From Bispira polyomma (taxonomy: Eukaryota): DNA of 64,000 nucleotides. The stretch covers positions 26,350,001 through 26,414,000 of the forward strand of contig OZ287752.1 in NCBI GenBank assembly GCA_965649765.1. The letters run 5' to 3'. The notes beneath the pieces are model-generated. The model made no database searches. It saw nothing but the letters and a program-made list of their open reading frames with translations, and was not told where the DNA came from. Position numbers and translations under genes: made by a program. Position 1 is the first letter of the stretch. Each line of letters starts with the position of its first letter. This document shows positions 21,901 to 63,519 of the stretch, one piece after another.

Positions 21901-23033
21901 TGTCTTTATATTTGTAGATATCATAGCCAAAAGGTGTTTTTCATCCTCAGTTTGTTCGAATAATCTACCAGTTATAACAAATACCGTTATTCTATAAATT
22001 GTGCCATCATAAAAATTGTTTTACACATTTTTCTTTATTTTAACATTGACTTTTTTGCAAGTCTTATAATGGTGTGGTTTTAGGTTTGGACACCAGATCT
22101 TCACACCATTTCTGTTTGACTGATAATCACAGTTTCATGTTTGTTCAAACTATTATCTATCATATCACGGTTGAATAAGTTACTCCCCAATGTTGATTTC
22201 AGTTTTAAAGGGTTTAAACAAACACCTAAATTGAGATGGATGTTTCTGCCAACTGATAACTAATAAACAACTGATCAATGGCTGATCCTATTCAGTATGG
22301 CATTACTCCACGCCATGCATGAAGGAAAAGTTAGCAGTATACCTACTGAAGGCCAGTTGTTTACAGAGCAGAAAACCTTTGCCAACTACCCTGTGTTTGA
22401 TTCTGATTGTCCTACACACTATTGAACTGGCCATCAGAATATATGACACAACATATGTTGAAAGCAAAGTTAAACCCAAACTAGAACCATACAAATCAAA
22501 AAGGTTAAATGTAAGGTTTAACTTCGATAGCCTTGGCTAGTGTGAGCTAAGGCTGCGAGTCGCAGTTTGTGAAGTGCATCGATGCATCACTTGATGCATC
22601 AAACAACCCATTTCAACCAAATAAAGTGCTGAGACAAACCTAAACTCAACTATTTTTTTGTGTTTTCCCACAAAAAAATTTAGGTGTAAAATAAATAGAA
22701 AGTTACATTTTCGTATATCTATTATTTTTATTTTTCCTAGGGGACAATATGCTTTTTGGCGCATACTAAAATTCAGCCAATAGGGAGTAAAATATAAATG
22801 AACGAGTCGCAAAGCCAGGACTCGATGCATCGCTATACTTACCACAGTCTAGTTTTTAATGCATTGACTAAACAACTAATCATCACAGCCTTAGTGTGTG
22901 GATTAGGTAAAATGACACTGCATATTTGAATGCAGTGCTGAAAGCTCTGCTACAAAGAATGGCTACAAATCAAAGCTATATACATTACACATAGAACACC
23001 AAATTAATCATGCATCCTCTAAGGTGCTGATAG

Positions 23034-23265
23034 AGGCCGCACTAGTCTAGTGGTTAGCAGCACCTGCTTCACAATCAATGGCCTCTCACCAAAGCAGATT
23101 AAAATCCTGTTCCTTTCTTCATGTGGAAAAGTTTGTCAGGTACTTGCCTGTAGGCCCGTGGTTTACAGTGTGTTTCAGCACTGGTATTCTTGAACCGTTG
23201 TACCTGGCCATTGTGATATGACCTAAGCTATTAAAAGTGACAACCCAACTAAAACCCAACTAAAT
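23034..23265 (+). mobile_element. Degenerate tRNA-derived SINE, present in each array unit
   Basis: GGCCGCACTAGTCTAGTGGTTAGCAGC...CTTCACAATCAATGGCCTCTCACC head like family 1; GATATGACCTAAGCTATTAAAAGTG tail. Confidence 0.7.
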
Positions 23266-24389
23266 TTTAAGTTTCTGGTTCTAGTCCATTAACGGGAAAC
23301 GTCGCTGTGGGAAAGAAACTTGATAGGGGGTTACAGGTGAGCATAGGTAATCTAGAAAAGGTAGGTTTCAATTGACTTCTAAAATGACATATCTTCTCAT
23401 TAGGGAACTCAGTGTGCCATACTACATCATTCTGGGGTATACTTTTGTAAGCATTCAATTTAATAGGGTTTTCAACTCTAAATTCAAATATGCAGTCAGT
23501 TTTTACTTATCTTTACTTCAGTCAGATATAATGAAAGTTCCAATATTTGTTTGTTTGAGCTTGATTCTGAGTTGGAAATGTTGCCGCTGATGTCATTAAA
23601 TATTAAGAAAATCAGAATCTATACAAAACTCATATTGGGACGAATAATAAAGTACAACTATGTATGCAAAACTCCTTTAATGCACGTTAAATTTTATTTT
23701 TTTAAATTTTTTTTCCGTAAAGATAATATGACGAAAAGTTCCCCATTGTACTATATGACAGCACTTGCCACACCAATTTCTAATAAAATCTATAATTTTT
23801 TGAGGGAAGCCCAGAATTGAGTAGTGTGGATTACAACAGTGAAACTCCTCAAAAGTGATCAATACCTAAAATATTAAGACCTCAGACTTGATGAGCCTTG
23901 GTCTTTAAGCCTACACTTACATGTATAAGATATACATCTTCTGGCATCAACCGACATCAGCCAATTGTCTTTATCCCTATAGTTACAGTGTAAGCACCTC
24001 CATGTGTCAGATGAGATCAGATGTCGTCAGAGGCTTCACATATTTTTGGTCAGGGCAAATATGGTCGATTTTGGGGTGTTTTTGTGGAATATATAATTTG
24101 GCTGATGTCATGGTAATGTAGGCTTACACTTTTAGGTGTTGTCCACTTTCATTGCAGTTTACGTGTATACTACTTTAATATGTCAAGCATAGAGCACTAT
24201 ACATGTACGTTATATAACATCTGTATGATACCAGTTAATTATTTTAAATAGTTCTCGGATAGTTTCTTGGAACATTGTGAAAACATTTAAATCAGATGGC
24301 AGAATAATAATTCAAATACAGCAAGGACTAAATAAACATTCCATATTTTGTGACTATAACTTTTAATAGTAATGTATATATATGTATAT

Positions 24390-25316
24390 TTACGACAGTT
24401 TATGTCCCATATATGACTCATAGACAATCTTGAATCGCTTTGTCACAAAGTCATAAAATTCATACTCTAGTTTTATAATGTCGTTATCCATCAGCATTTG
24501 CCTGGCTGCTGCACTCATTTTGGGGGCTTTAAACCCTGACGTATGTCTGTACTTCTCGCTTTCTTTCAGGTACATGTGTGCATCTACTGCCCCTTTAAAG
24601 TAATGTGGCAACATGGTCTCTAGTACTTCTAGAAACTCTATGTACTTTGTCACATGACCCACCACAGCGAATCCCGTCAGCACGTTCTTGATGGCCAGGT
24701 TGAGGGCATGTCTTGTTGGCGTTTGACACAGGTAGTGTTGTCCACAGAAATGAGGGATGATGGTCCAGATAAACCTGACATCAGTACACTCAGGGTCAAA
24801 GGTGAGGACACACTCGCCAAAAGGCACATTGTGTCTTCTGTGGACATCTTCGTCGTCGGCATCTTTGAAAAAGTCTCCTACTATCTGCCCATGGTAGGTG
24901 ATCTTGTTTTTGTTGTTAATTGCCCTGCGGTAGTAGTAATACGACTCCAGTCTGTCTATTGGATCTCGAATGAGGTTGATGTACACTGGATCCAGCTTAA
25001 TGCCGTAGCTTGTGAAATTGATATAGTTCAGATGCTTACAGAAAACCCAGGGCTCTTTCATTTGAAGTAGTTTGCCTGCGGTGTATTTGATACTATGTCT
25101 GTCCAGGTGATAATTTGCAGTGATATACGGTTGGGTGAAGCCCTGGGTTGTATAGAAGTTATTGGTCCGTGACACGTTATATATAACATAGCGAGTGGAT
25201 TGGCTTCCACATTTAGGAACCATGTTGTAAAATATGTGTTTCACAGACGAGTTGTACTTGTGATCCACTTTGGAGATGTCCCACTCATTATCCTTGAATC
25301 TTAGATCTGAAGGAAT
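24390..25316 (-). CDS. 2-O-sulfotransferase-like catalytic exon, gene A copy 1 (no own anchor exon)
   Basis: Acceptor TTTTGTGTTCCCTTACAG; 308 aa; YNMVPKCGS (5'-PSB), YINLIRDPIDRLES (3'-PB), IPHFCG, EYEFYDF as in HS2ST/UST. Confidence 0.85.
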   Translation of the reverse strand: MPSDLRFKDNEWDISKVDHKYNSSVKHIFYNMVPKCGSQSTRYVIYNVSRTNNFYTTQGFTQPYITANYHLDRHSIKYTAGKLLQMKEPWVFCKHLNYINFTSYGIKLDPVYINLIRDPIDRLESYYYYRRAINNKNKITYHGQIVGDFFKDADDEDVHRRHNVPFGECVLTFDPECTDVRFIWTIIPHFCGQHYLCQTPTRHALNLAIKNVLTGFAVVGHVTKYIEFLEVLETMLPHYFKGAVDAHMYLKESEKYRHTSGFKAPKMSAAARQMLMDNDIIKLEYEFYDFVTKRFKIVYESYMGHKLS

Positions 25317-25342
25317 CTGTAAGGGAACACAAAACATGTATT

Positions 25343-25346
<4 letters not shown>

Positions 25347-25410
<64 letters not shown>
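25347..25410. repeat. (TA)32 microsatellite; (TA)25 at 28751, (TA)26 at 32141, interrupted at 35533
   Basis: Read directly; the length differences account for the unit-length differences. Confidence 0.97.
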
Positions 25411-25416
<6 letters not shown>

Positions 25417-25480
25417 GTTGATTTATATAAGGATACAGTTTTTATACTTTATTGGCAATGCCTAAAATGTACCTAGCAAA

Positions 25481-25800
25481 TTCCTATAGCTGACTCTGCT
25501 GGGAGTCAGCTCAGTCAAAACGAAAAATCCCGACACAACCAAAGCCGACTCCCCTTTATGACACACACCAATATATGTATGTCACACACCAATATATGTA
25601 TGTAACACACCAATATATGTATGTCACACACCTGCACAACAATCGAGCTTCCGCCCATTGTCTTCATCACAAAAGTACTAATGAAATTTAAATTTATAGA
25701 AAGCTCAATTTCTCAGCGACTGCTGGTCAGAGCCTATATCACTCTTGAAAGTTTAGAAAAGCCACTTTTACTACAAAACAGTATTACTTACTGCAATTGA
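25481..25800. mobile_element. Helentron-associated (HINE/DINE-like) non-autonomous element fragment, in each unit
   Basis: Terminal hairpin AGCTGACTC-tgctgg-GAGTCAGCT (25488-25511), then three ~21-22-bp repeats CACACACCAATATATGTATGT (25561-25632). Confidence 0.45.
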
Positions 25801-27793
25801 ATGGCTGGTGTTGTGAGAATATAGAAATTAGTTTTTCAACTGGTATCGTTAAAGGACATTTAAAAGTTATCACATTTTATTCATATTGATGAAGTTTGAG
25901 AAAAAATCAAAAGGTGTATTTGTAAATTTAAAGAAAGAACATATTATAATTTTATATTGAGGAGGTCAGATTGGCATTTATTTTAAGTGGGCAGTGGATA
26001 GTTCAGAGATCTTATTGGCTGAAACATGGCCATGTGACAGTTAGTGAAAGATGATATAACCCTGTATTACAGTTTATTCTCGCCTCAGGAAGCTACCTTG
26101 CTGATAACTGTAAGTGTATCCTTATTGTGGTGCATATCTTTGTTTTGTTAAAATTGCGTACTACATACAACACAGCCTAATCTTGTAGCAAATGTTACTT
26201 GATTATAATGTGCAGGAGTTGATAGTTTAACATGATCACAGATGGATCCAGGATTCTAAAAAATCATTTTTGGGATTGCATCAAACACAAGTTTGACAAC
26301 TAAAGAGTCTCTATACTGAGAATTCATATTTGAATGCAGTGCTGAAAGCTCTGCTACAAAGAATGGCTACAAATCAAAGCTATATACATTACACATAGAA
26401 CACCAAATTAATCATGCATCCTCTAAGGTGCTGATAGAGGCCGCACTAGTCTAGTGGTTAGCAGCACCTGCTTCACAATCAATGGCCTCTCACCAAAGCA
26501 GATTAAAATCCTGTTCCTTCCTTCATGTGGAAAAGTTTGTCAGGTACTTGCCTGTAGGCCCGTGGTTTACAGTGTGTTTCAGCACTGGTATTCTTGAACC
26601 GTTGTACCTGGCCATTGTGATATGACCTAAGCTATTAAAAGTGACAACCCAACTAAAACCCAACTAAATTTTAAGTTTCTGGTTCTAGTCCATTAACGGG
26701 AAACGTCGCTGTGGGAAAGAAACTTGATAGGGGGTTACAGGTGAGCATAGGTAATCTAGAAAAGGTAGGTTTCAATTGACTTCTAAAATGACATATCTTC
26801 TCATTAGGGAACTCAGTGTGCCATACTACACCATTCTGGGGTATACTTTTGTAAGCATTCAATTTAATAGGGTTTTCAACTCTAAATTCAAATATGCAGT
26901 CAGTTTTTACTTATCTTTACTTCAGTCAGATATAATGAAAGTTCCAATATTTGTTTGTTTGAGCTTGATTCTGAGTTGGAAATGTTGCCGCTGATGTCAT
27001 TAAATATTAAGAAAATCAGAATCTATACAAAACTCATATTGGGACGAATAATAAAGTACAACTATGTATGCAAAACTCCTTTAATGCACGTTAAATTTTA
27101 TTTTTTTAAATTTTTTTTCCGTAAAGATAATATGACGAAAAGTTCCCCATTGTACTATATGACAGCACTTGCCACACCAATTTCTAATAAAATCTATAAT
27201 TTTTTGAGGGAAGCCCAGAATTGAGTAGTGTGGATTACAACAGTGAAACTCCTCAAAAGTGATCAATACCTAAAATATTAAGACCTCAGACTTGATGAGC
27301 CTTGGTCTTTAAGCCTACACTTACATGTATAAGATATACATCTTCTGGCATCAACCGACATCAGCCAATTGTCTTTATCCCTATAGTTACAGTGTAAGCA
27401 CCTCCATGTGTCAGATGAGATCAGATGTCGTCAGAGGCTTCACATATTTTTGGTCAGGGCAAATATGGTCGATTTTGGGGTGTTTTTGTGGAATATATAA
27501 TTTGGCTGATGTCATGGTAATGTAGGCTTACACTTTTAGGTGTTGTCCACTTTCATTGCAGTTTACGTGTATACTACTTTAATATGTCAAGCATAGAGCA
27601 CTATACATGTACGTTATATAACATCTGTATGATACCAGTTAATTATTTTAAATAGTTCTCGGATAGTTTCTTGGAACATTGTGAAAACATTTAAATCAGA
27701 TGGCAGAATAATAATTCAAATACAGCAAGGACTAAATAAACATTCCATATTTTGTGACTATAACTTTTAATAGTAATGTATATATATGTATAT

Positions 27794-28720
27794 TTACGAC
27801 AGTTTATGTCCCATATATGACTCATAGACAATCTTGAATCGCTTTGTCACAAAGTCATAAAATTCATACTCTAGTTTTATAATGTCGTTATCCATCAGCA
27901 TTTGCCTGGCTGCTGCACTCATTTTGGGGGCTTTAAACCCTGACGTATGTCTGTACTTCTCGCTTTCTTTCAGGTACATGTGTGCATCTACTGCCCCTTT
28001 AAAGTAATGTGGCAACATGGTCTCTAGTACTTCTAGAAACTCTATGTACTTTGTCACATGACCCACCACAGCGAATCCCGTCAGCACGTTCTTGATGGCC
28101 AGGTTGAGGGCATGTCTTGTTGGCGTTTGACACAGGTAGTGTTGTCCACAGAAATGAGGGATGATGGTCCAGATAAACCTGACATCAGTACACTCAGGGT
28201 CAAAGGTGAGGACACACTCGCCAAAAGGCACATTGTGTCTTCTGTGGACATCTTCGTCGTCGGCATCTTTGAAAAAGTCTCCTACTATCTGCCCATGGTA
28301 GGTGATCTTGTTTTTGTTGTTAATTGCCCTGCGGTAGTAGTAATACGACTCCAGTCTGTCTATTGGATCTCGAATGAGGTTGATGTACACTGGATCCAGC
28401 TTAATGCCGTAGCTTGTGAAATTGATATAGTTCAGATGCTTACAGAAAACCCAGGGCTCTTTCATTTGAAGTAGTTTGCCTGCGGTGTATTTGATACTAT
28501 GTCTGTCCAGGTGATAATTTGCAGTGATATACGGTTGGGTGAAGCCCTGGGTTGTATAGAAGTTATTGGTCCGTGACACGTTATATATAACATAGCGAGT
28601 GGATTGGCTTCCACATTTAGGAACCATGTTGTAAAATATGTGTTTCACAGACGAGTTGTACTTGTGATCCACTTTGGAGATGTCCCACTCATTATCCTTG
28701 AATCTTAGATCTGAAGGAAT
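27794..28720 (-). CDS. 2-O-sulfotransferase-like catalytic exon, gene A copy 2
   Basis: Protein identical to copy 1. Confidence 0.85.
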   Translation of the reverse strand: MPSDLRFKDNEWDISKVDHKYNSSVKHIFYNMVPKCGSQSTRYVIYNVSRTNNFYTTQGFTQPYITANYHLDRHSIKYTAGKLLQMKEPWVFCKHLNYINFTSYGIKLDPVYINLIRDPIDRLESYYYYRRAINNKNKITYHGQIVGDFFKDADDEDVHRRHNVPFGECVLTFDPECTDVRFIWTIIPHFCGQHYLCQTPTRHALNLAIKNVLTGFAVVGHVTKYIEFLEVLETMLPHYFKGAVDAHMYLKESEKYRHTSGFKAPKMSAAARQMLMDNDIIKLEYEFYDFVTKRFKIVYESYMGHKLS

Positions 28721-28746
28721 CTGTAAGGGAACACAAAACATGTATT

Positions 28747-28806
<60 letters not shown>

Positions 28807-31183
28807 GTTGATTTATATAAGGATACAGTTTTTATACTTTATTGGCAATGCCTAAAATGTACCTAGCAAATTCCTATAGCTGACTCTGCTGGGAGTCAGC
28901 TCAGTCAAAACGAAAAATCCCGACACAACCAAAGCCGACTCCCCTTTATGACACACACCAATATATGTATGTCACACACCAATATATGTATGTAACACAC
29001 CAATATATGTATGTCACACACCTGCACAACAATCGAGCTTCCGCCCATTGTCTTCATCACAAAAGTACTAATGAAATTTAAATTTATAGAAAGCTCAATT
29101 TCTCAGCGACTGCTGGTCAGAGCCTATATCACTCTTGAAAGTTTAGAAAAGCCACTTTTACTACAAAACAGTATTACTTACTGCAATTGAATGGCTGGTG
29201 TTGTGAGAATATAGAAATTAGTTTTTCAACTGGTATCGTTAAAGGACATTTAAAAGTTATCACATTTTATTCATATTGATGAAGTTTGAGAAAAAATCAA
29301 AAGGTGTATTTGTAAATTTAAAGAAAGAACATATTATAATTTTATATTGAGGAGGTCAGATTGGCATTTATTTTAAGTGGGCAGTGGATAGTTCAGAGAT
29401 CTTATTGGCTGAAACATGGCCATGTGACAGTTAGTGAAAGATGATATAACCCTGTATTACAGTTTATTCTCGCCTCAGGAAGCTACCTTGCTGATAACTG
29501 TAAGTGTATCCTTATTGTGGTGCATATCTTTGTTTTGTTAAAATTGCGTACTACATACAACACAGCCTAATCTTGTAGCAAATGTTACTTGATTATAATG
29601 TGCAGGAGTTGATAGTTTAACATGATCACAGATGGATCCAGGATTCTAAAAAATCATTTTTGGGATTGCATCAAACACAAGTTTGACAACTAAAGAGTCT
29701 CTATACTGAGAATTCATATTTGAATGCAGTGCTGAAAGCTCTGCTACAAAGAATGGCTACAAATCAAAGCTATATACATTACACATAGAACACCAAATTA
29801 ATCATGCATCCTCTAAGGTGCTGATAGAGGCCGCACTAGTCTAGTGGTTAGCAGCACCTGCTTCACAATCAATGGCCTCTCACCAAAGCAGATTAAAATC
29901 CTGTTCCTTCCTTCATGTGGAAAAGTTTGTCAGGTACTTGCCTGTAGGCCCGTGGTTTACAGTGTGTTTCAGCACTGGTATTCTTGAACCGTTGTACCTG
30001 GCCATTGTGATATGACCTAAGCTATTAAAAGTGACAACCCAACTAAAACCCAACTAAATTTTAAGTTTCTGGTTCTAGTCCATTAACGGGAAACGTCGCT
30101 GTGGGAAAGAAACTTGATAGGGGGTTACAGGTGAGCATAGGTAATCTAGAAAAGGTAGGTTTCAATTGACTTCTAAAATGACATATCTTCTCATTAGGGA
30201 ACTCAGTGTGCCATACTACATCATTCTGGGGTATACTTTTGTAAGCATTCAATTTAATAGGGTTTTCAACTCTAAATTCAAATATGCAGTCAGTTTTTAC
30301 TTATCTTTACTTCAGTCAGATATAATGAAAGTTCCAATATTTGTTTGTTTGAGCTTGATTCTGAGTTGGAAATGTTGCCGCTGATGTCATTAAATATTAA
30401 GAAAATCAGAATCTATACAAAACTCATATTGGGACGAATAATAAAGTACAACTATGTATGCAAAACTCCTTTAATGCACGTTAAATTTTATTTTTTTAAA
30501 TTTTTTTTCCGTAAAGATAATATGACGAAAAGTTCCCCATTGTACTATATGACAGCACTTGCCACACCAATTTCTAATAAAATCTATAATTTTTTGAGGG
30601 AAGCCCAGAATTGAGTAGTGTGGATTACAACAGTGAAACTCCTCAAAAGTGATCAATACCTAAAATATTAAGACCTCAGACTTGATGAGCCTTGGTCTTT
30701 AAGCCTACACTTACATGTATAAGATATACATCTTCTGGCATCAACCGACATCAGCCAATTGTCTTTATCCCTATAGTTACAGTGTAAGCACCTCCATGTG
30801 TCAGATGAGATCAGATGTCGTCAGAGGCTTCACATATTTTTGGTCAGGGCAAATATGGTCGATTTTGGGGTGTTTTTGTGGAATATATAATTTGGCTGAT
30901 GTCATGGTAATGTAGGCTTACACTTTTAGGTGTTGTCCACTTTCATTGCAGTTTACGTGTATACTACTTTAATATGTCAAGCATAGAGCACTATACATGT
31001 ACGTTATATAACATCTGTATGATACCAGTTAATTATTTTAAATAGTTCTCGGATAGTTTCTTGGAACATTGTGAAAACATTTAAATCAGATGGCAGAATA
31101 ATAATTCAAATACAGCAAGGACTAAATAAACATTCCATATTTTGTGACTATAACTTTTAATAGTAATGTATATATATGTATAT

Positions 31184-32110
31184 TTACGACAGTTTATGTC
31201 CCATATATGACTCATAGACAATCTTGAATCGCTTTGTCACAAAGTCATAAAATTCATACTCTAGTTTTATAATGTCGTTATCCATCAGCATTTGCCTGGC
31301 TGCTGCACTCATTTTGGGGGCTTTAAACCCTGACGTATGTCTGTACTTCTCGCTTTCTTTCAGGTACATGTGTGCATCTACTGCCCCTTTAAAGTAATGT
31401 GGCAACATGGTCTCTAGTACTTCTAGAAACTCTATGTACTTTGTCACATGACCCACCACAGCGAATCCCGTCAGCACGTTCTTGATGGCCAGGTTGAGGG
31501 CATGTCTTGTTGGCGTTTGACACAGGTAGTGTTGTCCACAGAAATGAGGGATGATGGTCCAGATAAACCTGACATCAGTACACTCAGGGTCAAAGGTGAG
31601 GACACACTCGCCAAAAGGCACATTGTGTCTTCTGTGGACATCTTCGTCGTCGGCATCTTTGAAAAAGTCTCCTACTATCTGCCCATGGTAGGTGATCTTG
31701 TTTTTGTTGTTAATTGCCCTGCGGTAGTAGTAATACGACTCCAGTCTGTCTATTGGATCTCGAATGAGGTTGATGTACACTGGATCCAGCTTAATGCCGT
31801 AGCTTGTGAAATTGATATAGTTCAGATGCTTACAGAAAACCCAGGGCTCTTTCATTTGAAGTAGTTTGCCTGCGGTGTATTTGATACTATGTCTGTCCAG
31901 GTGATAATTTGCAGTGATATACGGTTGGGTGAAGCCCTGGGTTGTATAGAAGTTATTGGTCCGTGACACGTTATATATAACATAGCGAGTGGATTGGCTT
32001 CCATATTTAGGAACCATGTTGTAAAATATGTGTTTCACAGACGAGTTGTACTTGTGATCCACTTTGGAGATGTCCCACTCATTATCCTTGAATCTTAGAT
32101 CTGAAGGAAT
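31184..32110 (-). CDS. 2-O-sulfotransferase-like catalytic exon, gene A copy 3 (PKCGS to PKYGS)
   Basis: Identical to the other copies except C>T at 32004. Confidence 0.85.
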   Translation of the reverse strand: MPSDLRFKDNEWDISKVDHKYNSSVKHIFYNMVPKYGSQSTRYVIYNVSRTNNFYTTQGFTQPYITANYHLDRHSIKYTAGKLLQMKEPWVFCKHLNYINFTSYGIKLDPVYINLIRDPIDRLESYYYYRRAINNKNKITYHGQIVGDFFKDADDEDVHRRHNVPFGECVLTFDPECTDVRFIWTIIPHFCGQHYLCQTPTRHALNLAIKNVLTGFAVVGHVTKYIEFLEVLETMLPHYFKGAVDAHMYLKESEKYRHTSGFKAPKMSAAARQMLMDNDIIKLEYEFYDFVTKRFKIVYESYMGHKLS

Positions 32111-32136
32111 CTGTAAGGGAACACAAAACATGTATT

Positions 32137-32198
<62 letters not shown>

Positions 32199-34575: not shown

Positions 34576-35528
34576 TTACGACAGTTTATGTCCCATATAT
34601 GACTCATAGACAATCTTGAATCGCTTTGTCACAAAGTCATAAAATTCATACTCTAGTTTTATAATGTCGTTATCCATCAGCATTTGCCTGGCTGCTGCAC
34701 TCATTTTGGGGGCTTTAAACCCTGACGTATGTCTGTACTTCTCGCTTTCTTTCAGGTACATGTGTGCATCTACTGCCCCTTTAAAGTAATGTGGCAACAT
34801 GGTCTCTAGTACTTCTAGAAACTCTATGTACTTTGTCACATGACCCACCACAGCGAATCCCGTCAGCACGTTCTTGATGGCCAGGTTGAGGGCATGTCTT
34901 GTTGGCGTTTGACACAGGTAGTGTTGTCCACAGAAATGAGGGATGATGGTCCAGATAAACCTGACATCAGTACACTCAGGGTCAAAGGTGAGGACACACT
35001 CGCCAAAAGGCACATTGTGTCTTCTGTGGACATCTTCGTCGTCGGCATCTTTGAAAAAGTCTCCTACTATCTGCCCATGGTAGGTGATCTTGTTTTTGTT
35101 GTTAATTGCCCTGCGGTAGTAGTAATACGACTCCAGTCTGTCTATTGGATCTCGAATGAGGTTGATGTACACTGGATCCAGCTTAATGCCGTAGCTTGTG
35201 AAATTGATATAGTTCAGATGCTTACAGAAAACCCAGGGCTCTTTCATTTGAAGTAGTTTGCCTGCGGTGTATTTGATACTATGTCTGTCCAGGTGATAAT
35301 TTGCAGTGATATACGGTTGGGTGAAGCCCTGGGTTGTATAGAAGTTATTGGTCCGTGACACGTTATATATAACATAGCGAGTGGATTGGCTTCCACATTT
35401 AGGAACCATGTTGTAAAATATGTGTTTCACAGACGAGTTGTACTTGTGATCCACTTTGGAGATGTCCCACTCATTATCCTTGAATCTTAGATCTGAAGGA
35501 ATCTGTAAGGGAACACAAAACATGTATT

Positions 35529-35587
<59 letters not shown>

Positions 35588-36513: not shown

Positions 36514-36544
<31 letters not shown>

Positions 36545-37406: not shown

Positions 37407-37651
37407 GGCGTATATCTATGTATATATAAATATATGTATCATCTACATGGCATTTAAACAAAACAAGCATCTATATACAATGTATATAGTTGAACCAACA
37501 GCAAAGAAAGGGTTTAGACATGTATCAGAATTCAATAAAGGATCTTCGTTGCACACACACAGATGTTCAGCAAGGTATATTTCTTGTATTGTATTTTTTA
37601 CAAGCAGTAACATCATTAAACTCCAACAAAGGTAGACAGATTCGATTTTAG

Positions 37652-51245: not shown

Positions 51246-51291
51246 AATGTGGTATCAGCACATGTACTATACTTTATGGTAAATGTCCTAT

Positions 51292-53505: not shown

Positions 53506-54509
53506 GGTTAGTTCTGATTCTCGAGTAGCTACTAGAAACACATACAAATATTAAAATGATAAAAATCCATATTTTGTACTGATACAGAGATGTTCAGTAA
53601 GCACGTTCACAGAGTGTTTGCAAAAAAAACAACAATACTAAATGCCAATGTCATTAGAGTCTGGGTTTCTTTATTGATATATTGACAAAATGCATCGTCC
53701 GACATATTTTAAAACCTGTCATTAATTTAAAGACACATGTTTGCAAGCACATCTACCGACTGGTTCACCCAATTTAATCCAATTTTTATCTGACATATAA
53801 CATATGCCCTACAAATAGTTTTAAGGCCACATATACACACACACAATCAGATTACAATCACATTAAAATAATACAAAAACGTTATCAGATTTTATCCCTT
53901 TTACAATTTTTAAAAGGTTAAGAATTTCAATAATGACATGCCAAGAAATTGCATACAATCTAGTTTTCCTAGGTATAAACTTAACAGTGTGGCTATTTCT
54001 GAGTGAAATTGAGAGAAGTTGTCTTTGAGTATGATAGCTCCTGAGCATATATCTTGGCAGAGCTCATTAATCCATAGAGATACAGCCATTCTTTTGACCA
54101 CAGTTTTTGTTAGTAGTTGCTTGGATGAGCATAAAGTCAGTAAGCTAATCATCAGGTTTCAAATACTCTGTCATATTCTTCACATTCACAATTAGATAGA
54201 AGGACCCATATGACAGAGTGTGTCAAAAGAAATATGCTTGATTCAAATTAAATGATGTGTTGAAATTAGTCATTTTTACATAGAGAGTCACAAATGGTCA
54301 TCGTCATGTAATGAGCACTTTGAGTACCACAACAGAGGAAGATGTGGTGTATAACAATGCAATACTACCTTGTACCATTTTTGCCCATAGAAGGAAATTT
54401 AAAAATTGAAGCTTTCCTGAGGCAGTTTATGGTAAGTAAAACAGATGTTAGATTTAGATTTGTTTTGGGATTCAGTTGTCAGATTTCTAAACTGCAAACC
54501 GGCCTTCCC

Positions 54510-54542
54510 ACATACATACATACATACATACATACATACATA
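54510..54542. repeat. (CATA)8 microsatellite
   Basis: Read directly. Confidence 0.9.
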
Positions 54543-55434
54543 GGGCCATACATAGGGACATAGATTGGAAACCCTCAACTGCAGAATCGAGAAGTGATTA
54601 CCTCTACATCAACAGGGTCTCCAGCAGGGATGAGATCTGTAACTAGTAAAACATATTTCACTAGGAAGACTAAGAATTGCCTCTACAGACTACCATATTG
54701 CAATCTTTTCGAATTAAGTGGGCATTGTCTTTCCAGGTAGGACATTTTTTTTTCCTTATTTTACCTATCATGTAAAACAGCTGGTTTCTTGCATTATGTA
54801 TTCAAATTGGTATTCAACATCTTTTACAATGCATTTTCACTAAACTAACGTTTTCTTAACTGCCTAGCTACAACCAACTGGCACCAGTAACTGTCATTTC
54901 TCTAAATGAAAAGTGAGACTTAACGATAACTATTTCTCAACATCACTGAGTTAACTAACCTTCCACTGGAGATAGGCACCCAGCAATAGAGGACCACCAT
55001 TTCAAATGGAGGTCCGAGCTATCTGCCTGTACCTTTTCAAAACTGGCGGGAATGGAACCCAGGTCCTCTGTGAGTGTGATAGCTACTAGGACCAAGTGGC
55101 AGATATTTACTTCTATAATATTTCTAGTCTCTGAAAACAGACTCTTTGTAACACTTTACAGGATGAGACAAATCTTAAATAGTAATCAGACAATTTGGGG
55201 GTTAAAATTTATCTTGTGGTGATATATTATGCTACCCGCTGCAGAATTACATAGAACAAACTAACAAAGTTATTGCCAAATGTAAATAGTAATTGTAACA
55301 TGCTATGGCAATATAGCCATATTTATCAGTAGTTAAAGCAAATACTTTGTTTCAAATCTAGTATACCTGTTGTAGTTGATTGGGATCAATGCATGGACTT
55401 TTTATGTGATTCCCTGATTTACACTTAGAGCAGT

Positions 55435-57885
55435 ATCTAATCTAATCTAATCTAGTCGTACATTTATAGCGTTTAATCTTTGTACAACAAATTCTAAGGC
55501 GCAACAAACCCAAAACGTTAATCGCAAATCAAAAATAGTGGGCGGATGGAAGTCGTAACCAGGGAGACTACCGTAAATGGTTGCAACGGCTAAGGTGGAA
55601 AAGCCCGTTCAAAAAGATAGGCCTTCAGATTACTCCTGAAAGAGGAGAAAGTTTGAACCAGGCGAACATGATCAGGTAGGCTGTTCCAAATGAGGGGGCC
55701 ATCATGAGCTAGGCAGTGATTGAACTGAACTTTGGATTTGTGGATGCGAGGGTTGAAAGTGGGAATGTTAAGGTATAATTTATCAGGGTTACTGCGCCTT
55801 GTCCTGACTGAGCATGTATATTTGGATAGATAGGGGCTAAAATAAGTGGGTAATCCAGAATTTAGAAATATATATATTATTGTTGCTGTTTTGCTGTTTT
55901 GAAAGCAACACGATATTTTATTGGGAGCCAGTGCAGTGACTTGAGTACAGGAGTAATGTGGGAAAATTTAGATGTTTTGGTCACAATACGTGCCAATGAG
56001 TGTTGGATATTCTGAAGGCGTATGAGATCACTACGAGATAAGGAACGGAACAGAGAGTTGCAGTAATCAAGCCTGTTGCTGACCAAAGCATTGGCAACAG
56101 TGATTGCAGTGGATTTGTAATGTAAATGTAAAACCGTCATGGATTCTGGTAATTTTATCAGTGAAAAAAGTACTAAAAATGTTTGCCAGTGATTTGCTAT
56201 TGGAATTTTCGGGTAGTATAGTCTGTTTTTTACGGTGGAGGGTGTTATTTAGTTTTTGCCAAAGTTTCTTCGGGTCACCCTCGCTTTGTGATATCATGTT
56301 AGCATAGTAGGCACGTTTTGAGTCATTTATAGTGTTGTTGCACCGGGTGATCCATTGGCGTAGTCTAGATCTATTTGTAGTAGTTTTGTTTCGGCGCCAT
56401 GTTCGTTCGGCTTGTCTGCGCAGCATCTTCATTTCACAATAATTACTGGTGATCCACTCAGGTGCAGGCTTCTTCAATGTCTTTGATTTACATGGCGCAT
56501 GGCGTTCTATAAGAGACTGCAGGTCAGTGCAGTACTGTGTGAAAAGGTCAGTGGCATTATCAGCAGGAGACTTGATGAAGGCCGTATCTGCCAACTCTCG
56601 TCTAAGGTCAGACATATTGATTTTTTGAAATTGCCGAAAAGTGATTTGTGTGACATCAAAAGATGGTGGGGAGGTAGCATCAATTTCACAGGATATTGAA
56701 AAATGATCACTGATGCAACCAATGTTTTTTATGTTTCTGATACCATTGAAATCAGTCGGAGTTAGCAAGCAGTCTAGTGTATGCCCATGAATATGGGTAG
56801 GGAAGTTTATGTGTTGGGTAAGATTGCAAGATTCCAAAACTGTGGAAAACTGATTACTATTTCCAGATGCGGTGTCTATGTGAATATTGAAATCCCCACA
56901 GAATACAGTAGGAGAGGGTAACGAGCAAGTAAACCCAATAAAAGACATGAATTCTTCGAAAAATGTAGTGAGATTTGAGCCAGGAGGCCGATAAACTGTT
57001 GCAAAATTTAAACACTGCTTTTTCCAGTGAGCAGAGACAAGGATGAGTTCGAAAGATGTAAAACTTGGTGTAGCAACTAATCGACATTCATAGTTTTTCT
57101 TAATAAAAAATCCCACCCCCCCCACCCTGTTTACCTACACGAGGGGTATGGAATAGCTGAAAGTCAGCTGGGGTAAGTTCAGAGAGGAATGATGGAGTAT
57201 CAGAACTCCTAATGTGTGTTTCTGTGATGCCGAAAATATCTATGGAGGATGAGTCGATCAAATCGGCTATGACAGGGCCTTTATTCCGCAACGAGCGGGC
57301 ATTTCCAAATCCGAACTGATTTGGGCCAGGGTTACTCGCAATATCACCTGCCAGTAGGATAGTAATGAGTTTGAATGTTTTAGCCTTTGGTAGGTAATTG
57401 ACTGGGCAGAATTTAGATCGAAAATAACAGTGTGTATGAAGGGACCAGAAGTGTGGAACAGGATTGCAAGACAAATTAATGTCTTCCAGGTGGTACTGCA
57501 TTGACAATGTATCAGATAGTTTTAAGTTGTTGCGGTAACAGAACGTAAGGAATGACAGGTACAAGATGGCAGCCCTAATGGCAAACATATTGTAAGGGGA
57601 GGAGTGAAAAAACAATATTGAACAAAAGTAAAAGTGTAAAAAGAAAAAGCAATTCGGAGCAAAACAAGGAATAAAATATTGCGTGAGGATACAAAAGGGC
57701 CAAGCGCTAAAAGTAAACGTGATGGTACAAAAAAAGGGGTACCAAGCACAAAAAACAGAAAACAATATATAGTGGTAATAGTCGATAATAGGGGATAGTT
57801 TTCAGTATAACCCCAAATTAAAAAAATAAGAGATGTTGTACAAAGACTAAGCATAAAAATAATCACACAAGTTTTAATCAATTGA
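55435..57885 (-). mobile_element. L2 family 2 element with 5' region, 2A-like motif and APE endonuclease; RT deleted
   Basis: LLAGDIASNPGP, NARSL, ITETH, GGGVG, YRPP, GDFN, THIHGHTLD, SDH; then DKITRIHDGF is fused at ~56130 to the C-terminal NRLDYCNSL; (ATTAG)n tail. Confidence 0.93.
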
Positions 57886-58029
57886 TTCTAATTCGAAGGT
57901 TTAATCAATAACAAGAACAGTCATTGTAAGATTTTAGACCGTGTGTTTGCCAGGTGTAATGTAGAATCACAGAATAGGAATATTTTTAAAAAAAAAAACA
58001 TCAGGCCACAAAGTCACAGCTCCAAAAGA

Positions 58030-59462
58030 ATAGACAAATTCAGGATTTAGTAAAAATGAGAAAGCCTATGGAATGAAAATACAAAATATTCCATGTCTGT
58101 ATAGAACAGAGACAACCACAGCATGGCTGAAAAAACTATATGATAAAATCTGGCAGGACGAAGAAACTCCAAAAGAATGAAGGAAAGTGATATTAATAGC
58201 TCTGACAAAAAAGGAGATGTCAGTAAATGCTGAAGAGGTGTAACCTTGCTATCTGTGCCAAGCAAAATACTAGGAAGCATAATGAACCTACAAGGATCTT
58301 GGTCACTGTTGACCAACACTTAAGAAAATAACAGGCAGGCTTTAGAAAAGGACGAAGAACAACTGACCAAATATTCGTTCTGATAAACATAGTTGACCAA
58401 AGCATAGCATGGCAAGCGCCTCTATACATCAACTTTATCGAAAAAGCATTTGATAGCATCCACAGAGAAACATTATGGAAAACACTAGAGTTGTATGGGG
58501 TACCACCAAAAATAACCAATGTGATCAAGAAACTATATGAAAAAGCAAAGTATGCGTAATGTACAACAGTAACACTTATAGAATTATTAGCAGTATGTCT
58601 GGATTCCTCTTCTTAATTGCACTAGACAGGGTCATGAGAAACAGCACAAAATGGAAAAATACTGGTACAAGAAGGAAATTCACAACCTATAAGATCTGAT
58701 TTTGCTGACAACATCACAATACTATCCAGTAGACATAAAGACAGATAGAGTCAAAGAATGGGCCGAAAAAGTAAGACTAAAAATAAATAAAAGAAAAACC
58801 GAGTGAATGAGAATCAATACAAAATTAGACAAAAAACTAGAAAAAACAACAACAAAGAAATTGAAGATTGCAGCGAGTTCATATATCTGAGAGCCAAAAT
58901 AAACACAAATGGAGGAGCCAGTGAAGATATAAATACTAAACTATAACAAGACAGGAACGCATTCGCAGTCAAGTTCGGAAATAAAACATCTACAACAAAG
59001 CTAACCAAGGTGAAGATCTATAAAATAAATGGGAAATCAATCTTACTATATGGATAAGCATGCTGGAAAACAACAAAAGCGGATGTAAAGACATGCGAAA
59101 CGTTCTAAAATAGATGTCTGAAAAGAATTCTAAAAATATCCTGGCCAACAAAATTACCAATCAACACCTTTTAGAAAAAACAAAAGTAAAGTCAATGGAA
59201 ATTAGTATAAGAAAAGGAGATGAAAACACATAGGCCACAAGAACAGAAAATGGTATGAAAGTGGCAATGACATGGGCCCCATAAGGAAAAAGAAAAAAAG
59301 GAAGACCCAGAGAAACATGGAGGAGGACAGTAAAAAGAGAGAGAAGAGAGATGGGGTGGTCCAACTAGAAAGAAGCAGAGGCTGTAGCCAAAGACAGACC
59401 AAGGTGGAAAAGAGTGCTTGTCGTCTGATGTTCCAACAGGGGCGAAGATAAAAAGTAAGTAG
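58030..59462 (+). mobile_element. Degenerate RTE-clade LINE
   Basis: GVTLLSVPAK, QAGFRKGRRTTDQIF, EKAFDSIHRETLW, YGVPPKI, DFADN, RKKGRP-ETWRR; TAAG-like tail. Confidence 0.88.
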
Positions 59463-60099
59463 AAAACATTGTAATATTGTGTTCAGTAACAAATATAGTT
59501 GACCACCAGGCTTGATACCAATAATACAAAAACATGACATTTAAATTATTTGACAATAAAGGCCAATTTTAAATACATTGTTTCTTCATTCTATACAAAA
59601 TGAAACCTTTCGGTTTGACTTTTAACCCTTCTCTTTTTACTATTTTATGAATGCATATAGAGTGAAGTCCGTAGGTTTTGTTGGATCTTTAACAAGTACA
59701 TTCTAGATTAAACAAATTCGACAGACCACAAAAAATATGGACATTTTCCTTGCATTGTCGTAATGTTGAGAACAGGACTACATTATAAAACTAAAGCCAA
59801 AACAAAAGGATCCACTTATATAATTAATGATAGTAAGCACCAGCCCATTGTGGGTTTTGAATAGTTGTTAAAAGGCAGAATTACATACCTCTGCCAGACA
59901 CTATTTGTCCCAAAAAAATAAAAACAGTTCATGAATCCACCTTCTATCAAGATCCAGGGTCATAGACTCGTTGGAAACTGAAGGTGGCCAGCAGGGCCAG
60001 TAACTTTTACACTTTAGTGGCCTGTATGAATATAAAGTGGCCTTTAAAATTTTCTAATTCTGATACGCCATTACGGTACCCATGATAAAAAAAATCAGG

Positions 60100-60313
60100 A
60101 CTATTAAGACTAAAGAATCTAGAATTGGCCACTGTATCTGAAATTGGCCACCTCTAAAAGTTAAGCTAAATCAATAAAAACTGGTGAAATATAACTGGAA
60201 TGTGGTTAAGTAAGACTAAAAAGTCACAAAATTCGGCCAAAAACACAACATTTTCTAGGTGGCCAATATCAGATACAGCGGCCAATTTTAGATTCCTTAA
60301 TCCTTACTCTAGT
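60100..60313. mobile_element. Small fold-back MITE
   Basis: GAATCTAGAATTGGCCACTGTATCTGAAATTGGCCACCT is inverted at AGGTGGCCAATATCAGATACAGCGGCCAATTTTAGATTC. Confidence 0.8.
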
Positions 60314-61790
60314 ATCTTTCCATAAAATTCACCAAAAGTCCATATATAATATGCAGCGTCCATTCTAGGAATTTCAAAATGTGGGGGCACTTCCCCACTG
60401 TCACTGAAAAAGTGGGGGAATGCAATTTCAAATGGGGGACAAAAGTAAGCAATTTAGCCAATATAAAAATTCATCAAATAAATTTATGCTGTCCATTTAT
60501 GCTGTCCATTTATGCTGTCTGATATATGCATCTGATGTGCAATACAAAAAAAACAAAAAACTTCCCCTTTATGGTTGCTAGGGTTTGAATAAATTATACA
60601 CTGTTTTTATGTGGTTACAAATCCACTCGCTAGGTGGCGCTTGGAATTTGCTAGAAGAAAGCTAGTCGTTTATTGATTGTCACAGGACAACTCCTCGATT
60701 TTGAACTAATGAAAATGTAGCATACAAACAGCCACTGTATTTTAATATTTTAGAAGCTGCACAGAGTGAGATATGTGGTTGTTTTGTTTACAAATGGCCT
60801 AATCCGCAATTGAAGGAAATGTTATAAAATAAAGCCGATAAAAGGTATTTTATTGCTTTAAATCGTTGCAGGACACGTGGACTTCGAATCCTGTATATCG
60901 CTCATGCGCTGAAGTAATAAAAATGCGTTTTTTATTTGGGTAGTGGTTTCATTTAGCGATCGCGAAAACCGGAAGTAAGCAAACTTCTTCGAGAACGGCT
61001 TTTGTCTTGTCACCTCCAGATCTAAATCGTCAGCCAGGCGACCTCGAAATATGTTTTACTTATCGAAATAAAGTCGCCACTGGCGAGTTCGCGACTGCGA
61101 ATTTTTGCCCCTGAAGATCCACTACAAAATAATTTTTTTCTTTCATAAATTTTTCTTTGGCCCATTATTTATATGTAAAATAATGTTAAGTTTGAGATCT
61201 GTTGTCTAAATGTTAAATAAAAGCAATACTTTTTATTGATTTTTATTCCATAAGAGTAATTTCAGTATTTTTAGCTTTTATACAATACAAAACAAGTTCA
61301 GTGTAACAGCAGAAATACACAGCCATCTTTTAGGCTCATATGTCAATTTTAAACTCGAACAACACATTGTAAATTCATAACAATTGAGACTTGGTTTATT
61401 ATGATTTTGTAAATTTTTAGGTTTGTAGCCAAAAAAGCAATAGCACAGAATGGTAATAAACAATAATACTATGGTAAAACTTGGAAGTTGAGTGCATATG
61501 TAGTTCATATATTCCAAGATTTCTGAACAAAAATGGAATTAAGTAAAAAGTATCATTTCATCTTACATTGTATTATTTTTATGTTTAATTCCTGAATGAA
61601 ATTTCTTTATAAAATTAAATGCTTAAGGGTTGATTTACGTGTGGTTAGGACTGGAGTCTGTGTCTGGACACAGATTGTGGTGCTTTAGAAGTTAACATTA
61701 ACATTAACAATGTACAAACCAACTCTATATGGTATATTACTCCATATAATTGGTTCAATGTGTGCTATTAACACATGTGTAATGTCCTAT

Positions 61791-63165
61791 TTATGACAAT
61801 TTGCGTTCAGTGGATGATTCATAAATAACCTTAAACCTCTTCCTGATAAAGTCATAGAATTCATACTCCAGCTTTATTGCATTATTCTTCATCAGTACCT
61901 CCTTGGCTTCTACACTTGTCTTTGGACCATCGAATTCTCTCTTGTGGCGATAAGCTGGAATTTTATGGTCAAGATATTTGTCCATTTCTACTGCACCTTT
62001 GAAGAACTGTGGCAACAACACTTCTGCTACTTCTAGAAACTGGACAAACTTTTCTACATGTCCCACTACAGCGAAATCCGTCAGCACATTCTTGATGGCC
62101 AGGTTGAGGGCATGTCTTGTTGGCGTTTGACACAGGTAGTGTTGTCCACAGAAATGTGGGATGATGGTCCAGATAAACCTGACATCAGTACACTCAGGGT
62201 CAAAGGTGAGGACACACTCGTCAAATGTCATGTTGTGTCTTCTCTGGGCATCTGCTTTGTCTGCATCTTTGAAGAAGTCTGCCACAACCTTTCCCCAATA
62301 GGTGATAATGTTCTCCGATAAATTTGCGGTCCTACGCAAGTAATAATGAGATTCTAATTTATCAATGGGATCTCTGACAATATTGATGTAAACTGGGTCA
62401 AGGTTGTAGCCTTCTTTTGTGAAATTAATATAGTTCAAGTGTTTGGTAAACAGCCAGGGTTCATTAAGGCTAAGTAGACCATGAGCAGTGGTTCTGATGC
62501 TTTCTTTGCTGATATGATAATTGGCTATAATGTACGTCTCGGTGAAATCTTTGCTTACGGTGTAGCGATTAACTTGCGACAGGCTATTGAGGAGGTAACG
62601 CATGGGCTTGCTTCCACATCTAGGCACCATGTTATAAAAGACCTGTTTTGCAGAAGAGACATTCCTCTTGTTAACCATCAATAAATCCCATTGTGGACCC
62701 ATCGTAAATTGAGCAGATTCCTTCAAAAAACAAACAATAAAAGAATAAAATTTTATGCTCATATGTACATTCTTTGATGTACAATACGCATCACCAAAAA
62801 TATAAAATTTCAAAAGGGACCAATTTATTTTTAGCTCTAATAAATGGCTACAAGGCTGCACATTCTGAACTATAATCAGTTGACGTCATTTAATTTTACT
62901 AATACCGATGCAGTTTTATTAAGTTGCTGGCAATGCAAACCTTGAGTTACATACTTAACAATAACAGAATCTAATAGCTTAATAGAGAACTGTGGAAACT
63001 GATATAGTAAGCCTTGTAGAATTTGTACACTAGAAGGAATTTATATACAAAAGCAAATATATTTACCTCTTTTTGTGTACTTGGATCATCCTTATCAAAG
63101 ACAAGAAAAGCAACAGACAAAATTATCAGAAGAAATAATAGGAACGATTTAAACCTGAACTTCAT
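61791..63165 (-). CDS. Gene E: 2-O-sulfotransferase-like, 342 aa
   Basis: Anchor exon 63165-63067 MKFRFKSFLLFLLIILSVAFLVFDKDDPSTQKE (donor GTAAAT) plus catalytic exon 62720-61791 (acceptor TTTTTTGAAG). Confidence 0.9.
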
Positions 63166-63519
63166 GTTGATGCCATATTTACCAAACAAAGCTCAATAGA
63201 CGTATTTACACAAGTTTATTAGTCACCGACAATCTACACCAAGAAAGCAAGAAGAATGTATATTAGAATTCAATACATACATATTGTTTTTACACATTTA
63301 GATTTTGATGCACATTCTGTACAAGATTGTATTTTAGCAGATGATGTCTGTGCTTAAACAGTATGACTGATTGGAGTTGTGTAGTTATTGATATATTGAC
63401 AACTGTAACATCAGTTTAGAATAGCTTACCGTCCATTCTTGCTTAGTGATATAAGCGCCATTGTTTTCATGGACCATTATACTATATAGCTTAGACATTT
63501 ATTTATTTTAGTCATATAC

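What the first reader, a model, noticed from the sequence alone, without database searches (positions are those of the whole stretch)
22921..63200. A fast-evolving cluster of 2-O-sulfotransferase-like genes that shuffles anchor and catalytic exons
Seen: eight catalytic exons and several anchor-type exons in 41 kb, all joined by a phase-0 intron, so any anchor is in frame with any downstream catalytic exon. Known: HS2ST and UST are generally single-copy, multi-intron Golgi enzymes; Drosophila pipe is a precedent for shared 5' exons with alternative duplicated sulfotransferase modules. Inference: this lineage independently expanded an intronless catalytic module and is diversifying glycan sulfation (mucus, matrix or egg coat) by exon duplication, chimerism and conversion.
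Basis: partly seen in the sequence, partly recalled or inferred. Interest (0 to 1): 0.85.

Follow-up and report, generated by a model that had tools for sequence, protein, structure and literature searches.

The report
Tandem sulfotransferase gene cluster, recently rearranged
An old three-gene cluster of Golgi-type sugar-sulfating enzymes in an invertebrate has grown to eight catalytic exons by ordinary tandem duplication, one fused gene and copy-correction between paralogues; nothing shows that its exons are mixed by splicing.

Summary
Eight single-exon Sulfotransfer_2 (UST/HS2ST-like) catalytic modules lie on the minus strand between 24.4 and 62.7 kb. There are also five usable short membrane-anchor exons and two broken ones. 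Every anchor-to-catalytic join is phase 0.

"Shuffling" is supported only at the DNA level.
- One distant relative carries three single, separately anchored genes in the same order, orthologous to A, B and C/D/E. The cluster and its phase-0 intron are therefore old.
- A tandem duplication with ends in E's anchor exon and B's first intron made a fused gene: B-type promoter and anchor with an E-type catalytic exon. It was copied again to give D and C. C is now a pseudogene (TAA, lost donor). D carries a LINE at the junction.
- A 3.4-kb unit holding A's catalytic exon, without its anchor exon, was amplified to four copies that differ at about 7 substitutions. Read-derived contigs confirm the array.
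- Gene conversion has homogenised about 150 nt in the middle of all the paralogues; A and E differ at 1 of 120 nt there.

The family has roughly 60 loci genome-wide, so it is not single-copy here. No RNA data exist, so combinatorial splicing is untested and looks unlikely. This is an ordinary, well-resolved case of birth-and-death evolution. Other first-stage notes of this scan already describe parts of this stretch.

The parts
22921..36507 (.). Four-unit head-to-tail tandem array (units of 3390-3404 bp). Each unit holds about 1 kb of gene A's intron 1, the catalytic exon and about 1.5 kb of 3' flank. No unit holds an anchor exon.
   Evidence: Self-BLAST gives 99.6-99.8% identity. Unit alignment shows about 7 substitutions plus (TA)n length differences. 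Read contigs bridge the junction at 33106/33107 with raised word depth. The array ends share no repeat, only 1-2 nt of microhomology.
24390..25316 (-). Catalytic exon A1 (intact, 308 codons + stop); no anchor exon of its own.
27794..28720 (-). Catalytic exon A2 (protein identical to A1).
31184..32110 (-). Catalytic exon A3. Its only coding difference is at 32004, Cys to Tyr in the PAPS-binding loop (PKCGSQ to PKYGSQ).
34576..35502 (-). Catalytic exon A4, the copy nearest the A anchor exon; acceptor CCCTTACAG|ATT.
37299..37406 (-). Gene A anchor exon (36 codons, hydrophobic core, donor GAG|GTAAGC, phase 0). It is the only A-type anchor in the window.
   Evidence: The relative has an A-type anchor at L001:8813-8890.
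40366..41298 (-). Gene B catalytic exon. The frame is intact, but Ile replaces the His that aligns with the HS2ST catalytic base His142.
   Evidence: The relative's orthologue P0002 has Leu at this position.
42439..42543 (-). Gene B anchor exon (type 1; donor AGG|GTAGGT).
45238..46167 (-). Gene C catalytic exon, a pseudogene with an in-frame TAA at 45790-45792 and substitutions at otherwise invariant residues.
46419..46514 (-). C hybrid anchor exon. Its ATG and first 9 or so codons derive from B-type intron sequence and are fused in frame to the 3' two-thirds of an E-type anchor exon; donor AAG|GTAAAT.
   Evidence: The same ATG-containing sequence lies in B's intron at about 42274-42300.
46609..46734 (-). 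C type-1 anchor remnant. A 23-nt deletion removed the donor, so the reading frame runs into a stop.
51292..52221 (-). Gene D catalytic exon (intact, E-type).
52487..52564 (-). D relic of the E-type anchor exon, cut off from its ATG by the LINE fragment.
52566..53242 (.). 5'-truncated LINE fragment inserted at the duplication junction of D. It is 96.5% identical to 55435-56120 and is absent from C.
53401..53505 (-). Gene D anchor exon (type 1, B-like; donor AAG|GTGAGT). Together with the D catalytic exon it forms the chimeric gene.
61791..62720 (-). Gene E catalytic exon (intact).
63067..63165 (-). Gene E anchor exon (type 2; donor GAG|GTAAAT).
   Evidence: The relative's type-2 anchor is at L003:9262-9366.
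62097..62216 (-). Core of the gene-conversion tract. E differs from A (24693-24812 and the equivalent place in each A copy) at 1 of 120 nt, and from its sister D at 6.
42274..63133 (-). Three co-linear duplication units (63133 to 53251, 52552 to 46500, 46484 to 42274). Each holds the 3' part of the type-2 anchor exon, an E-type catalytic exon, intergenic DNA, the B-type upstream region, a type-1 anchor and the first 165 nt or so of B-type intron.
   Evidence: Co-linear BLAST segments; junction alignments.

Best explanation
This is a tandem cluster of separate two-exon genes. Each has a short exon for a type-II membrane anchor and one exon for the whole UST/HS2ST-like sulfotransferase domain. 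The common ancestor with the one relative found already had three such genes in the order E-type, B-type, A-type. Four ordinary DNA-level events then reshaped the cluster in this lineage. (1) A tandem duplication with one end about 33 nt into E's anchor exon and the other about 165 nt into B's intron 1 left E and B intact. Between them it created a chimeric gene with a B-type promoter and anchor exon and an E-type catalytic exon. (2) Unequal crossing-over copied that unit again, giving D and C. C then decayed and D acquired a LINE at the junction. (3) Very recently a 3.4-kb piece of gene A, holding the catalytic exon but not the anchor exon, was amplified to four copies. A4 is the working terminal exon. 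A1-A3 are most likely silent, or at best redundant alternative 3' exons. (4) Ectopic gene conversion keeps the central 150 nt or so of all paralogues nearly identical. The shared phase-0 intron comes from common descent. The enzymes are inferred to be Golgi PAPS-dependent glycan O-sulfotransferases; their substrate is unknown.
For: Family and motifs: searches show the Pfam hit, the PSB loop, RDPIDRL, and a His aligned to HS2ST His142 in A, C, D and E. Orthology and order: the flank tree groups A with P0001, B with P0002 (98/96) and C/D/E with P0003 (92/92). All three relative genes lie on one contig in the same orientation and order, one copy each within +-10 kb. Two of them have their own anchor exon and a phase-0 acceptor. 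Chimera: co-linear homology of the three units. The junction is identical in C and D, and the hybrid ATG traces to B's intron. A array. Its boundary at 36507 lies inside intron 1, 790 nt below the donor. Conversion: paralogues are 93-99% nt-identical in codons 181-220, against 56-72% in the flanks and 66-77% for orthologues and for the relative's own paralogues. The tree of the centre groups by genome. Purifying selection: dN/dS is 0.19-0.33. Each catalytic exon is followed by poly(A)-signal-like hexamers.
Against: No transcript data exist. It is therefore not shown that each gene is transcribed separately, that D's chimera is expressed, or that A1-A3 are silent. Only one relative was found and it is distant (dS saturated), so the events cannot be dated finely. 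No anchor exon was found for the relative's B orthologue within 6 kb. About 7.6 kb of the relative's cluster was not fetched. Word depth in contigs is a rough guide to copy number, and the DNA runs may come from the assembly's own sample.
Confidence: 0.75

Rival explanations
1. The cluster, or at least gene A, is a pipe-like complex locus. Transcripts starting at one anchor exon run through several catalytic exons and splice to alternative ones, giving anchor/catalytic combinations.
For: All exons lie on one strand and all joins are phase 0. Gene A has one anchor exon followed by four complete terminal exons with identical strong acceptors. Drosophila pipe has one common first coding exon and ten isoforms (PMC3291829). 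The intact chimeric D gene suggests that an anchor swap was tolerated.
Against: A4, B, D and E each have their own anchor exon and homologous upstream DNA. The relative's genes are 18-28 kb apart, and at least two have their own anchors. The A copies encode the same protein, so no isoform diversity would result. Each exon is followed by poly(A)-like signals. No transcript evidence exists either way.
Confidence: 0.15
2. The four-copy A array is an assembly artefact, produced by over-expansion of a single-copy or two-copy region.
For: Identity is 99.7-99.8%. The DNA runs found may be the assembly's own data.
Against: The units differ at fixed positions and in (TA)n length. Read-derived contigs bridge the head-to-tail junction. 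Word depth on the unit is 2.4-5 times that of the flank in all three runs. A variant at 34939 sits at about one quarter of the depth.
Confidence: 0.05
3. The near-identical central segment reflects extreme purifying selection on the active-site region rather than gene conversion.
For: The segment encodes the most conserved protein block of the family.
Against: Synonymous sites are also identical among this genome's paralogues, whereas the relative's three genes differ from each other and from their orthologues at 23-37% of nucleotides in the same codons. The tree of the centre groups by genome. E matches A better than it matches its sister D.
Confidence: 0.07

Closest known systems
Vertebrate uronyl 2-sulfotransferase (UST) and heparan sulfate 2-O-sulfotransferase (HS2ST; PDB 3F5F, 4NDZ)
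   Same: Same Pfam family (PF03567). About 30% identity to UST and E = 2e-29 to HS2ST structures. The PSB loop, RDPIxRL motif and the His aligned to the catalytic base His142 are conserved. A predicted N-terminal type-II anchor is present. The local motifs (xKCGSx, T-K/R-H) look more like UST than HS2ST.
   Different: The cluster is not orthologous to UST. It sits in a large genome-specific clade of roughly 60 loci. The whole catalytic domain lies in one exon. B, C, D and E have Arg in place of the PSB-loop Lys. B lacks the catalytic His. The substrate is unknown.
Drosophila pipe locus (ten isoforms from a common first coding exon plus alternative sulfotransferase exons; PMC3291829)
   Same: It belongs to the same enzyme superfamily. 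Gene A has one anchor exon followed by four complete catalytic terminal exons on the same strand, all in phase.
   Different: The A copies are about 99.8% identical and encode the same protein. The other genes keep their own anchors. No transcripts show alternative use.
Chimeric genes formed at tandem-duplication junctions, and birth-and-death evolution with gene conversion in tandem gene families (general knowledge; not tied to a paper read here)
   Same: The junction joins parts of two neighbouring parent genes while both parents stay intact. The unit is later copied, one copy becomes a pseudogene, a transposon inserts, and there are conversion tracts between paralogues.
   Different: Nothing in kind. 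The feature particular to this case is that the junction fused an intronic ATG in frame to a truncated anchor exon, creating a second potential anchor. That anchor was kept in C and destroyed in D.
Carbohydrate sulfotransferase expansions reported in lophotrochozoan genomes (Alvinella pompejana, PMC12403961; Pinctada fucata martensii, PMC5597905)
   Same: These are lineage-specific expansions of Golgi glycan sulfotransferases to tens of genes, linked by the authors to sulfated tube, mucus or matrix glycans.
   Different: Those reports concern CHST-type families. The UST/HS2ST-like clade and this cluster's fine structure are not described in the papers I could search.

Membership tests
UST/HS2ST-type sulfotransferases (Pfam PF03567 Sulfotransfer_2) | Profile match above the curated threshold | tested here: met
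   A scores 44.1 bits, B 29.3, D 32.6 and E 33.2, against a cut-off of 22. The C fragment downstream of its stop gave no hit, but the full-length read-through is 88% identical to D.
UST/HS2ST-type sulfotransferases (Pfam PF03567 Sulfotransfer_2) | 5'-phosphosulfate-binding loop (P-K-x-x-S/T) and the RDPIxR 3'-phosphate motif | tested here: met
   In the alignment to 3f5f, PKTAST corresponds to PKCGSQ in A and RDPIERL to RDPIDRL. B, C, D and E have PRCGSK, i.e. Lys to Arg. From general knowledge, Arg occupies this place in tyrosylprotein sulfotransferases, so activity is not excluded.
UST/HS2ST-type sulfotransferases (Pfam PF03567 Sulfotransfer_2) | Catalytic base His (HS2ST His142; the H142A mutant keeps <1% activity, PMC6094399) | tested here: met
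   His is present in A, C, D and E (KHLNY). It is not met in B (KILNY) or in the relative's B orthologue (KLLHY).
UST/HS2ST-type sulfotransferases (Pfam PF03567 Sulfotransfer_2) | N-terminal type-II membrane anchor | tested here: met
   The first exons encode Met-Lys followed by a 17-20-residue hydrophobic stretch (Kyte-Doolittle mean 2.1-3.0). This is a prediction only; localisation was not tested.
UST/HS2ST-type sulfotransferases (Pfam PF03567 Sulfotransfer_2) | One-to-one orthology with UST or HS2ST | tested here: not met
   Vertebrate UST falls outside the clade that holds this cluster and its nearest paralogues.
UST/HS2ST-type sulfotransferases (Pfam PF03567 Sulfotransfer_2) | PAPS-dependent 2-O-sulfation of uronic acid in GAGs | not testable with these tools
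   This needs recombinant enzyme assays.
pipe-like complex locus (shared 5' exon, alternative catalytic exons) | One 5' coding exon followed by several complete catalytic exons in the same phase | tested here: met
   Gene A has its anchor at 37299-37406 and four terminal exons, all phase 0.
pipe-like complex locus (shared 5' exon, alternative catalytic exons) | The catalytic exons encode different isoforms | tested here: not met
   A1, A2 and A4 encode identical proteins. A3 differs by one residue.
pipe-like complex locus (shared 5' exon, alternative catalytic exons) | Transcripts that join the common exon to each alternative exon | not testable with these tools
   No RNA run is on record for this organism.
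Chimeric gene born at a tandem-duplication junction | A junction joining parts of two neighbouring genes, with both parents retained on either side | tested here: met
   The E-exon-1/B-intron-1 junction is shared by C and D, with E upstream and B downstream.
Chimeric gene born at a tandem-duplication junction | The chimera is expressed and functional | not testable with these tools
   D has an intact frame and good splice sites, and dN/dS against E is 0.25. No RNA data exist.

The most novel reading that the evidence does not exclude
Gene A is a pipe-type complex locus caught at birth. Read-through transcripts from its single anchor exon splice to any of four freshly amplified terminal catalytic exons, and cross-gene splicing from upstream anchors (E, D, B) into downstream catalytic exons also occurs. 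The cluster would then work as a combinatorial anchor/enzyme generator that independently converges on the Drosophila pipe design.
Probability: 0.12. Interest if true: 0.65.

Novelty: new member of a known kind. Interest (0 to 1): 0.35.

Why it matters
The locus records, at base-pair resolution, how a glycan-sulfotransferase family grows. The steps visible here are a duplication junction that swaps a membrane anchor and promoter onto another catalytic exon, reciprocal decay of redundant anchors, amplification of an exon without its 5' exon, and gene conversion across paralogues separated by tens of kilobases. It is a useful worked example for annotators, because anchor-less exon copies and chimeras are easily mis-modelled. 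It is also a starting point for asking why UST-like enzymes number in the tens in this animal. It does not change what is known about how such families evolve. Without transcripts it says nothing yet about glycan diversification.

Tried and rejected
RNA evidence: the look-up of sequencing runs returned only three DNA runs kept as contigs and no RNA run. Expression, splice combinations and use of A1-A3 could therefore not be tested. Reads were laid on checking the A array.

More relatives: the protein search found close kin on only one ENA contig. A scan of JGI metagenome contigs with the family alignment found nothing.

NAHR origin of the A array: no shared repeat lies at its two ends, so this was rejected. 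The high-copy 210-bp repeat lies inside the unit, not at its edges.

Positive selection or 'fast-evolving' proteins: dN/dS is 0.19-0.33, so this is not supported.

Anchor exon of the relative's B orthologue: none was found within 6 kb upstream.

Literature: a search for UST-family expansion papers found nothing, and a broader search gave no direct hit.

Exons were searched one by one by reference.

Not run: structure prediction, complex prediction and the exhaustive representative search. The sequence match to solved HS2ST already settles the fold.
Full report
**What is there**

The window is G000:C5:26350001-26414000 of a 1.035-Gb animal genome.

Eight long open frames lie on the minus strand between 24.4 and 62.9 kb.
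- The intact ones tested (A, B, D, E) match Pfam Sulfotransfer_2 above threshold.
- Copy A aligns to the solved HS2ST structures 3f5f and 4ndz at E = 2e-29.
- Vertebrate UST is about 30% identical.

Each frame is preceded by a polypyrimidine tract and an AG. This places the exon starts at 25316, 28720, 32110 and 35502 (A1-A4), 41298 (B), 46167 (C), 52221 (D) and 62720 (E).

I scanned the minus strand for ATG + hydrophobic stretch + GT donor. This found anchor exons for:
- A: 37299-37406
- B: 42439-42543
- D: 53401-53505
- E: 63067-63165
- C: a hybrid anchor at 46419-46514

There are also two broken anchor exons: a C type-1 remnant (46609-46734) and a D type-2 relic (52487-52564).

All anchor coding lengths and all catalytic exon lengths are multiples of three, so every join is phase 0.

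**The cluster is old**

The only close relatives in the protein collection are three proteins (66, 54 and 56% identical to A) on one 1.49-Mb ENA contig. They lie in the same orientation, 18-28 kb apart. Each is single-copy within +-10 kb.

A tree of the parts outside the conversion tract pairs A with P0001, B with P0002 (98/96) and C/D/E with P0003 (92/92). The protein tree agrees for A and B.

The order along the relative's contig in the direction of transcription is P0003, P0002, P0001. That equals E/D/C, B, A here.

P0003 has an E-type anchor exon 640 bp upstream with a GTAAAT donor and a phase-0 acceptor. P0001 has an A-type anchor about 1.1 kb upstream.

The two-exon, phase-0 design and a three-gene cluster therefore predate the split of the two species. 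Synonymous sites between orthologues are saturated, so that split is distant.

**The chimera**

Sensitive self-comparison shows three co-linear units: 63133 to 53251, 52552 to 46500 and 46484 to 42274. Each unit contains:
- the 3' two-thirds of the E-type anchor exon
- an E-type catalytic exon
- intergenic DNA
- a B-type upstream region
- a type-1 anchor exon
- the first 165 nt or so of B-type intron

Nucleotide alignments place the same breakpoint in C and D. B-type intron sequence, which includes an ATG also present in B's own intron at about 42300, runs into the E-type anchor exon from about its 33rd nucleotide.

One tandem duplication with ends in E exon 1 and B intron 1 explains this. It leaves E and B intact and creates between them a gene with B's promoter and anchor and E's catalytic exon. 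A second unequal exchange added another unit.

Afterwards the two copies diverged:
- C lost the type-1 donor through a 23-nt deletion and acquired a TAA at 45790-45792.
- D received a 5'-truncated LINE 12 nt after the hybrid ATG. The LINE spans 52566-53242 and is 96.5% identical to 55435-56120.

D therefore uses the B-type anchor, and C retains only the hybrid anchor. Among C, D and E, dS is 0.17-0.22 and dN/dS is 0.25-0.33.

**The A array**

The region 22921-36507 consists of four head-to-tail units of about 3.4 kb. They differ at about 7 substitutions and in a (TA)n tract.

The upper boundary lies inside intron 1, 790 nt below the donor. A1-A3 therefore have no anchor exon, and none was found inside the units.

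The only coding difference is in A3: Cys to Tyr in the PAPS-binding loop, at 32004.

The array ends share no repeat, which points to a non-homologous first duplication followed by unequal exchange.

Contigs built from reads of three DNA runs bridge the unit junction at 33106/33107. Their word depth is 2.4-5 times higher on the unit than on the flank. The array is therefore real in the reads, although the runs may be the assembly's own sample.

**Gene conversion**

In codons 181-220 the paralogues A, B, D and E are 93-99% identical at the nucleotide level. The flanks are 56-72% identical, and orthologues and the relative's own paralogues are 66-77% identical.
- A and E differ at 1 of 120 nt (E 62097-62216), whereas D and E differ at 6.
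- The tree of the central 240 nt groups all copies of this genome together.

This confirms conversion, including the A/E patch noted by a first-stage reader.

**Function**

This part is inferred. Motifs aligned to HS2ST show a PSB loop (PKCGSQ in A; PRCGSK in B-E), RDPIDRL, and the His equivalent to the catalytic base His142 in A, C, D and E. The H142A mutant of HS2ST keeps less than 1% activity (PMC6094399).

B has Ile at that position and its orthologue has Leu. B's non-synonymous divergence from its orthologue (0.256) is like that of A (0.220) and D (0.233). B therefore looks like a conserved catalytically altered paralogue.

The proteins are most likely Golgi type-II PAPS-dependent glycan sulfotransferases. 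The substrate is unknown.

**Context**

The family has roughly 60 loci in this genome. Several are tandem clusters that contain pseudogenes, and many have a single-exon catalytic module.

Expansions of other carbohydrate sulfotransferase families are reported in an annelid (PMC12403961) and a pearl oyster (PMC5597905).

The pipe precedent, ten isoforms sharing a common first coding exon, is real (PMC3291829). Gene A resembles it only in layout.

**Limits**

No RNA run exists for this organism, so transcription and splice combinations are untested.

**Verdict**

This is a new member of a known kind, of moderate interest.

Noticed in passing
window 40366-41298 (-) and L002:10001-10960: Gene B and its orthologue in the relative both lack the His that aligns with the HS2ST catalytic base (Ile and Leu respectively). 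Both keep intact frames and diverge at a normal protein rate. This is a conserved candidate pseudo-enzyme or an enzyme with altered mechanism.
   Followed up: partly
window 33250-33460 (also 23064-23274, 26468-26678, 29858-30068): A 210-bp element inside each A unit has word depths of 15,000-90,000 in the read contigs, against about 60-370 for the rest of the unit. It is a very high-copy SINE- or MITE-like repeat of this genome.
   Followed up: no
window 34939: All three DNA runs show an A>T variant at about one quarter of the word depth inside the A catalytic exon. It is absent from all four assembled copies. It could be an allelic copy or an extra copy.
   Followed up: no
window 25347-25360 and equivalents: A (TA)n microsatellite lies directly upstream of the A acceptor's pyrimidine tract. 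Its length varies among the four units by up to 14 nt.
   Followed up: no
window 55435-57765 (-) and 10468-12122 (+): These are LINE-type retrotransposon copies (Exo_endo_phos_2 and RVT_1 hits). The first is the source type of the fragment inserted in gene D.
   Followed up: partly
window 15515-17360 (-): Exons of an MFS transporter gene that looks like a monocarboxylate transporter (Pfam MFS_1) flank the cluster on its downstream side.
   Followed up: no
G000:C10:15.11-15.29 Mb; C4:22.61-22.70 Mb; C4:84.38-84.60 Mb: Other tandem clusters of the same sulfotransferase family occur here. Several members carry in-frame stops. The nearest sister clade has an extra intron near residue 60-80.
   Followed up: partly
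window 41300-41433 (-): The roughly 60 nt upstream of B's acceptor, including a CCTCCAG motif, is locally duplicated, giving a second acceptor-like site about 70 nt upstream.
   Followed up: no
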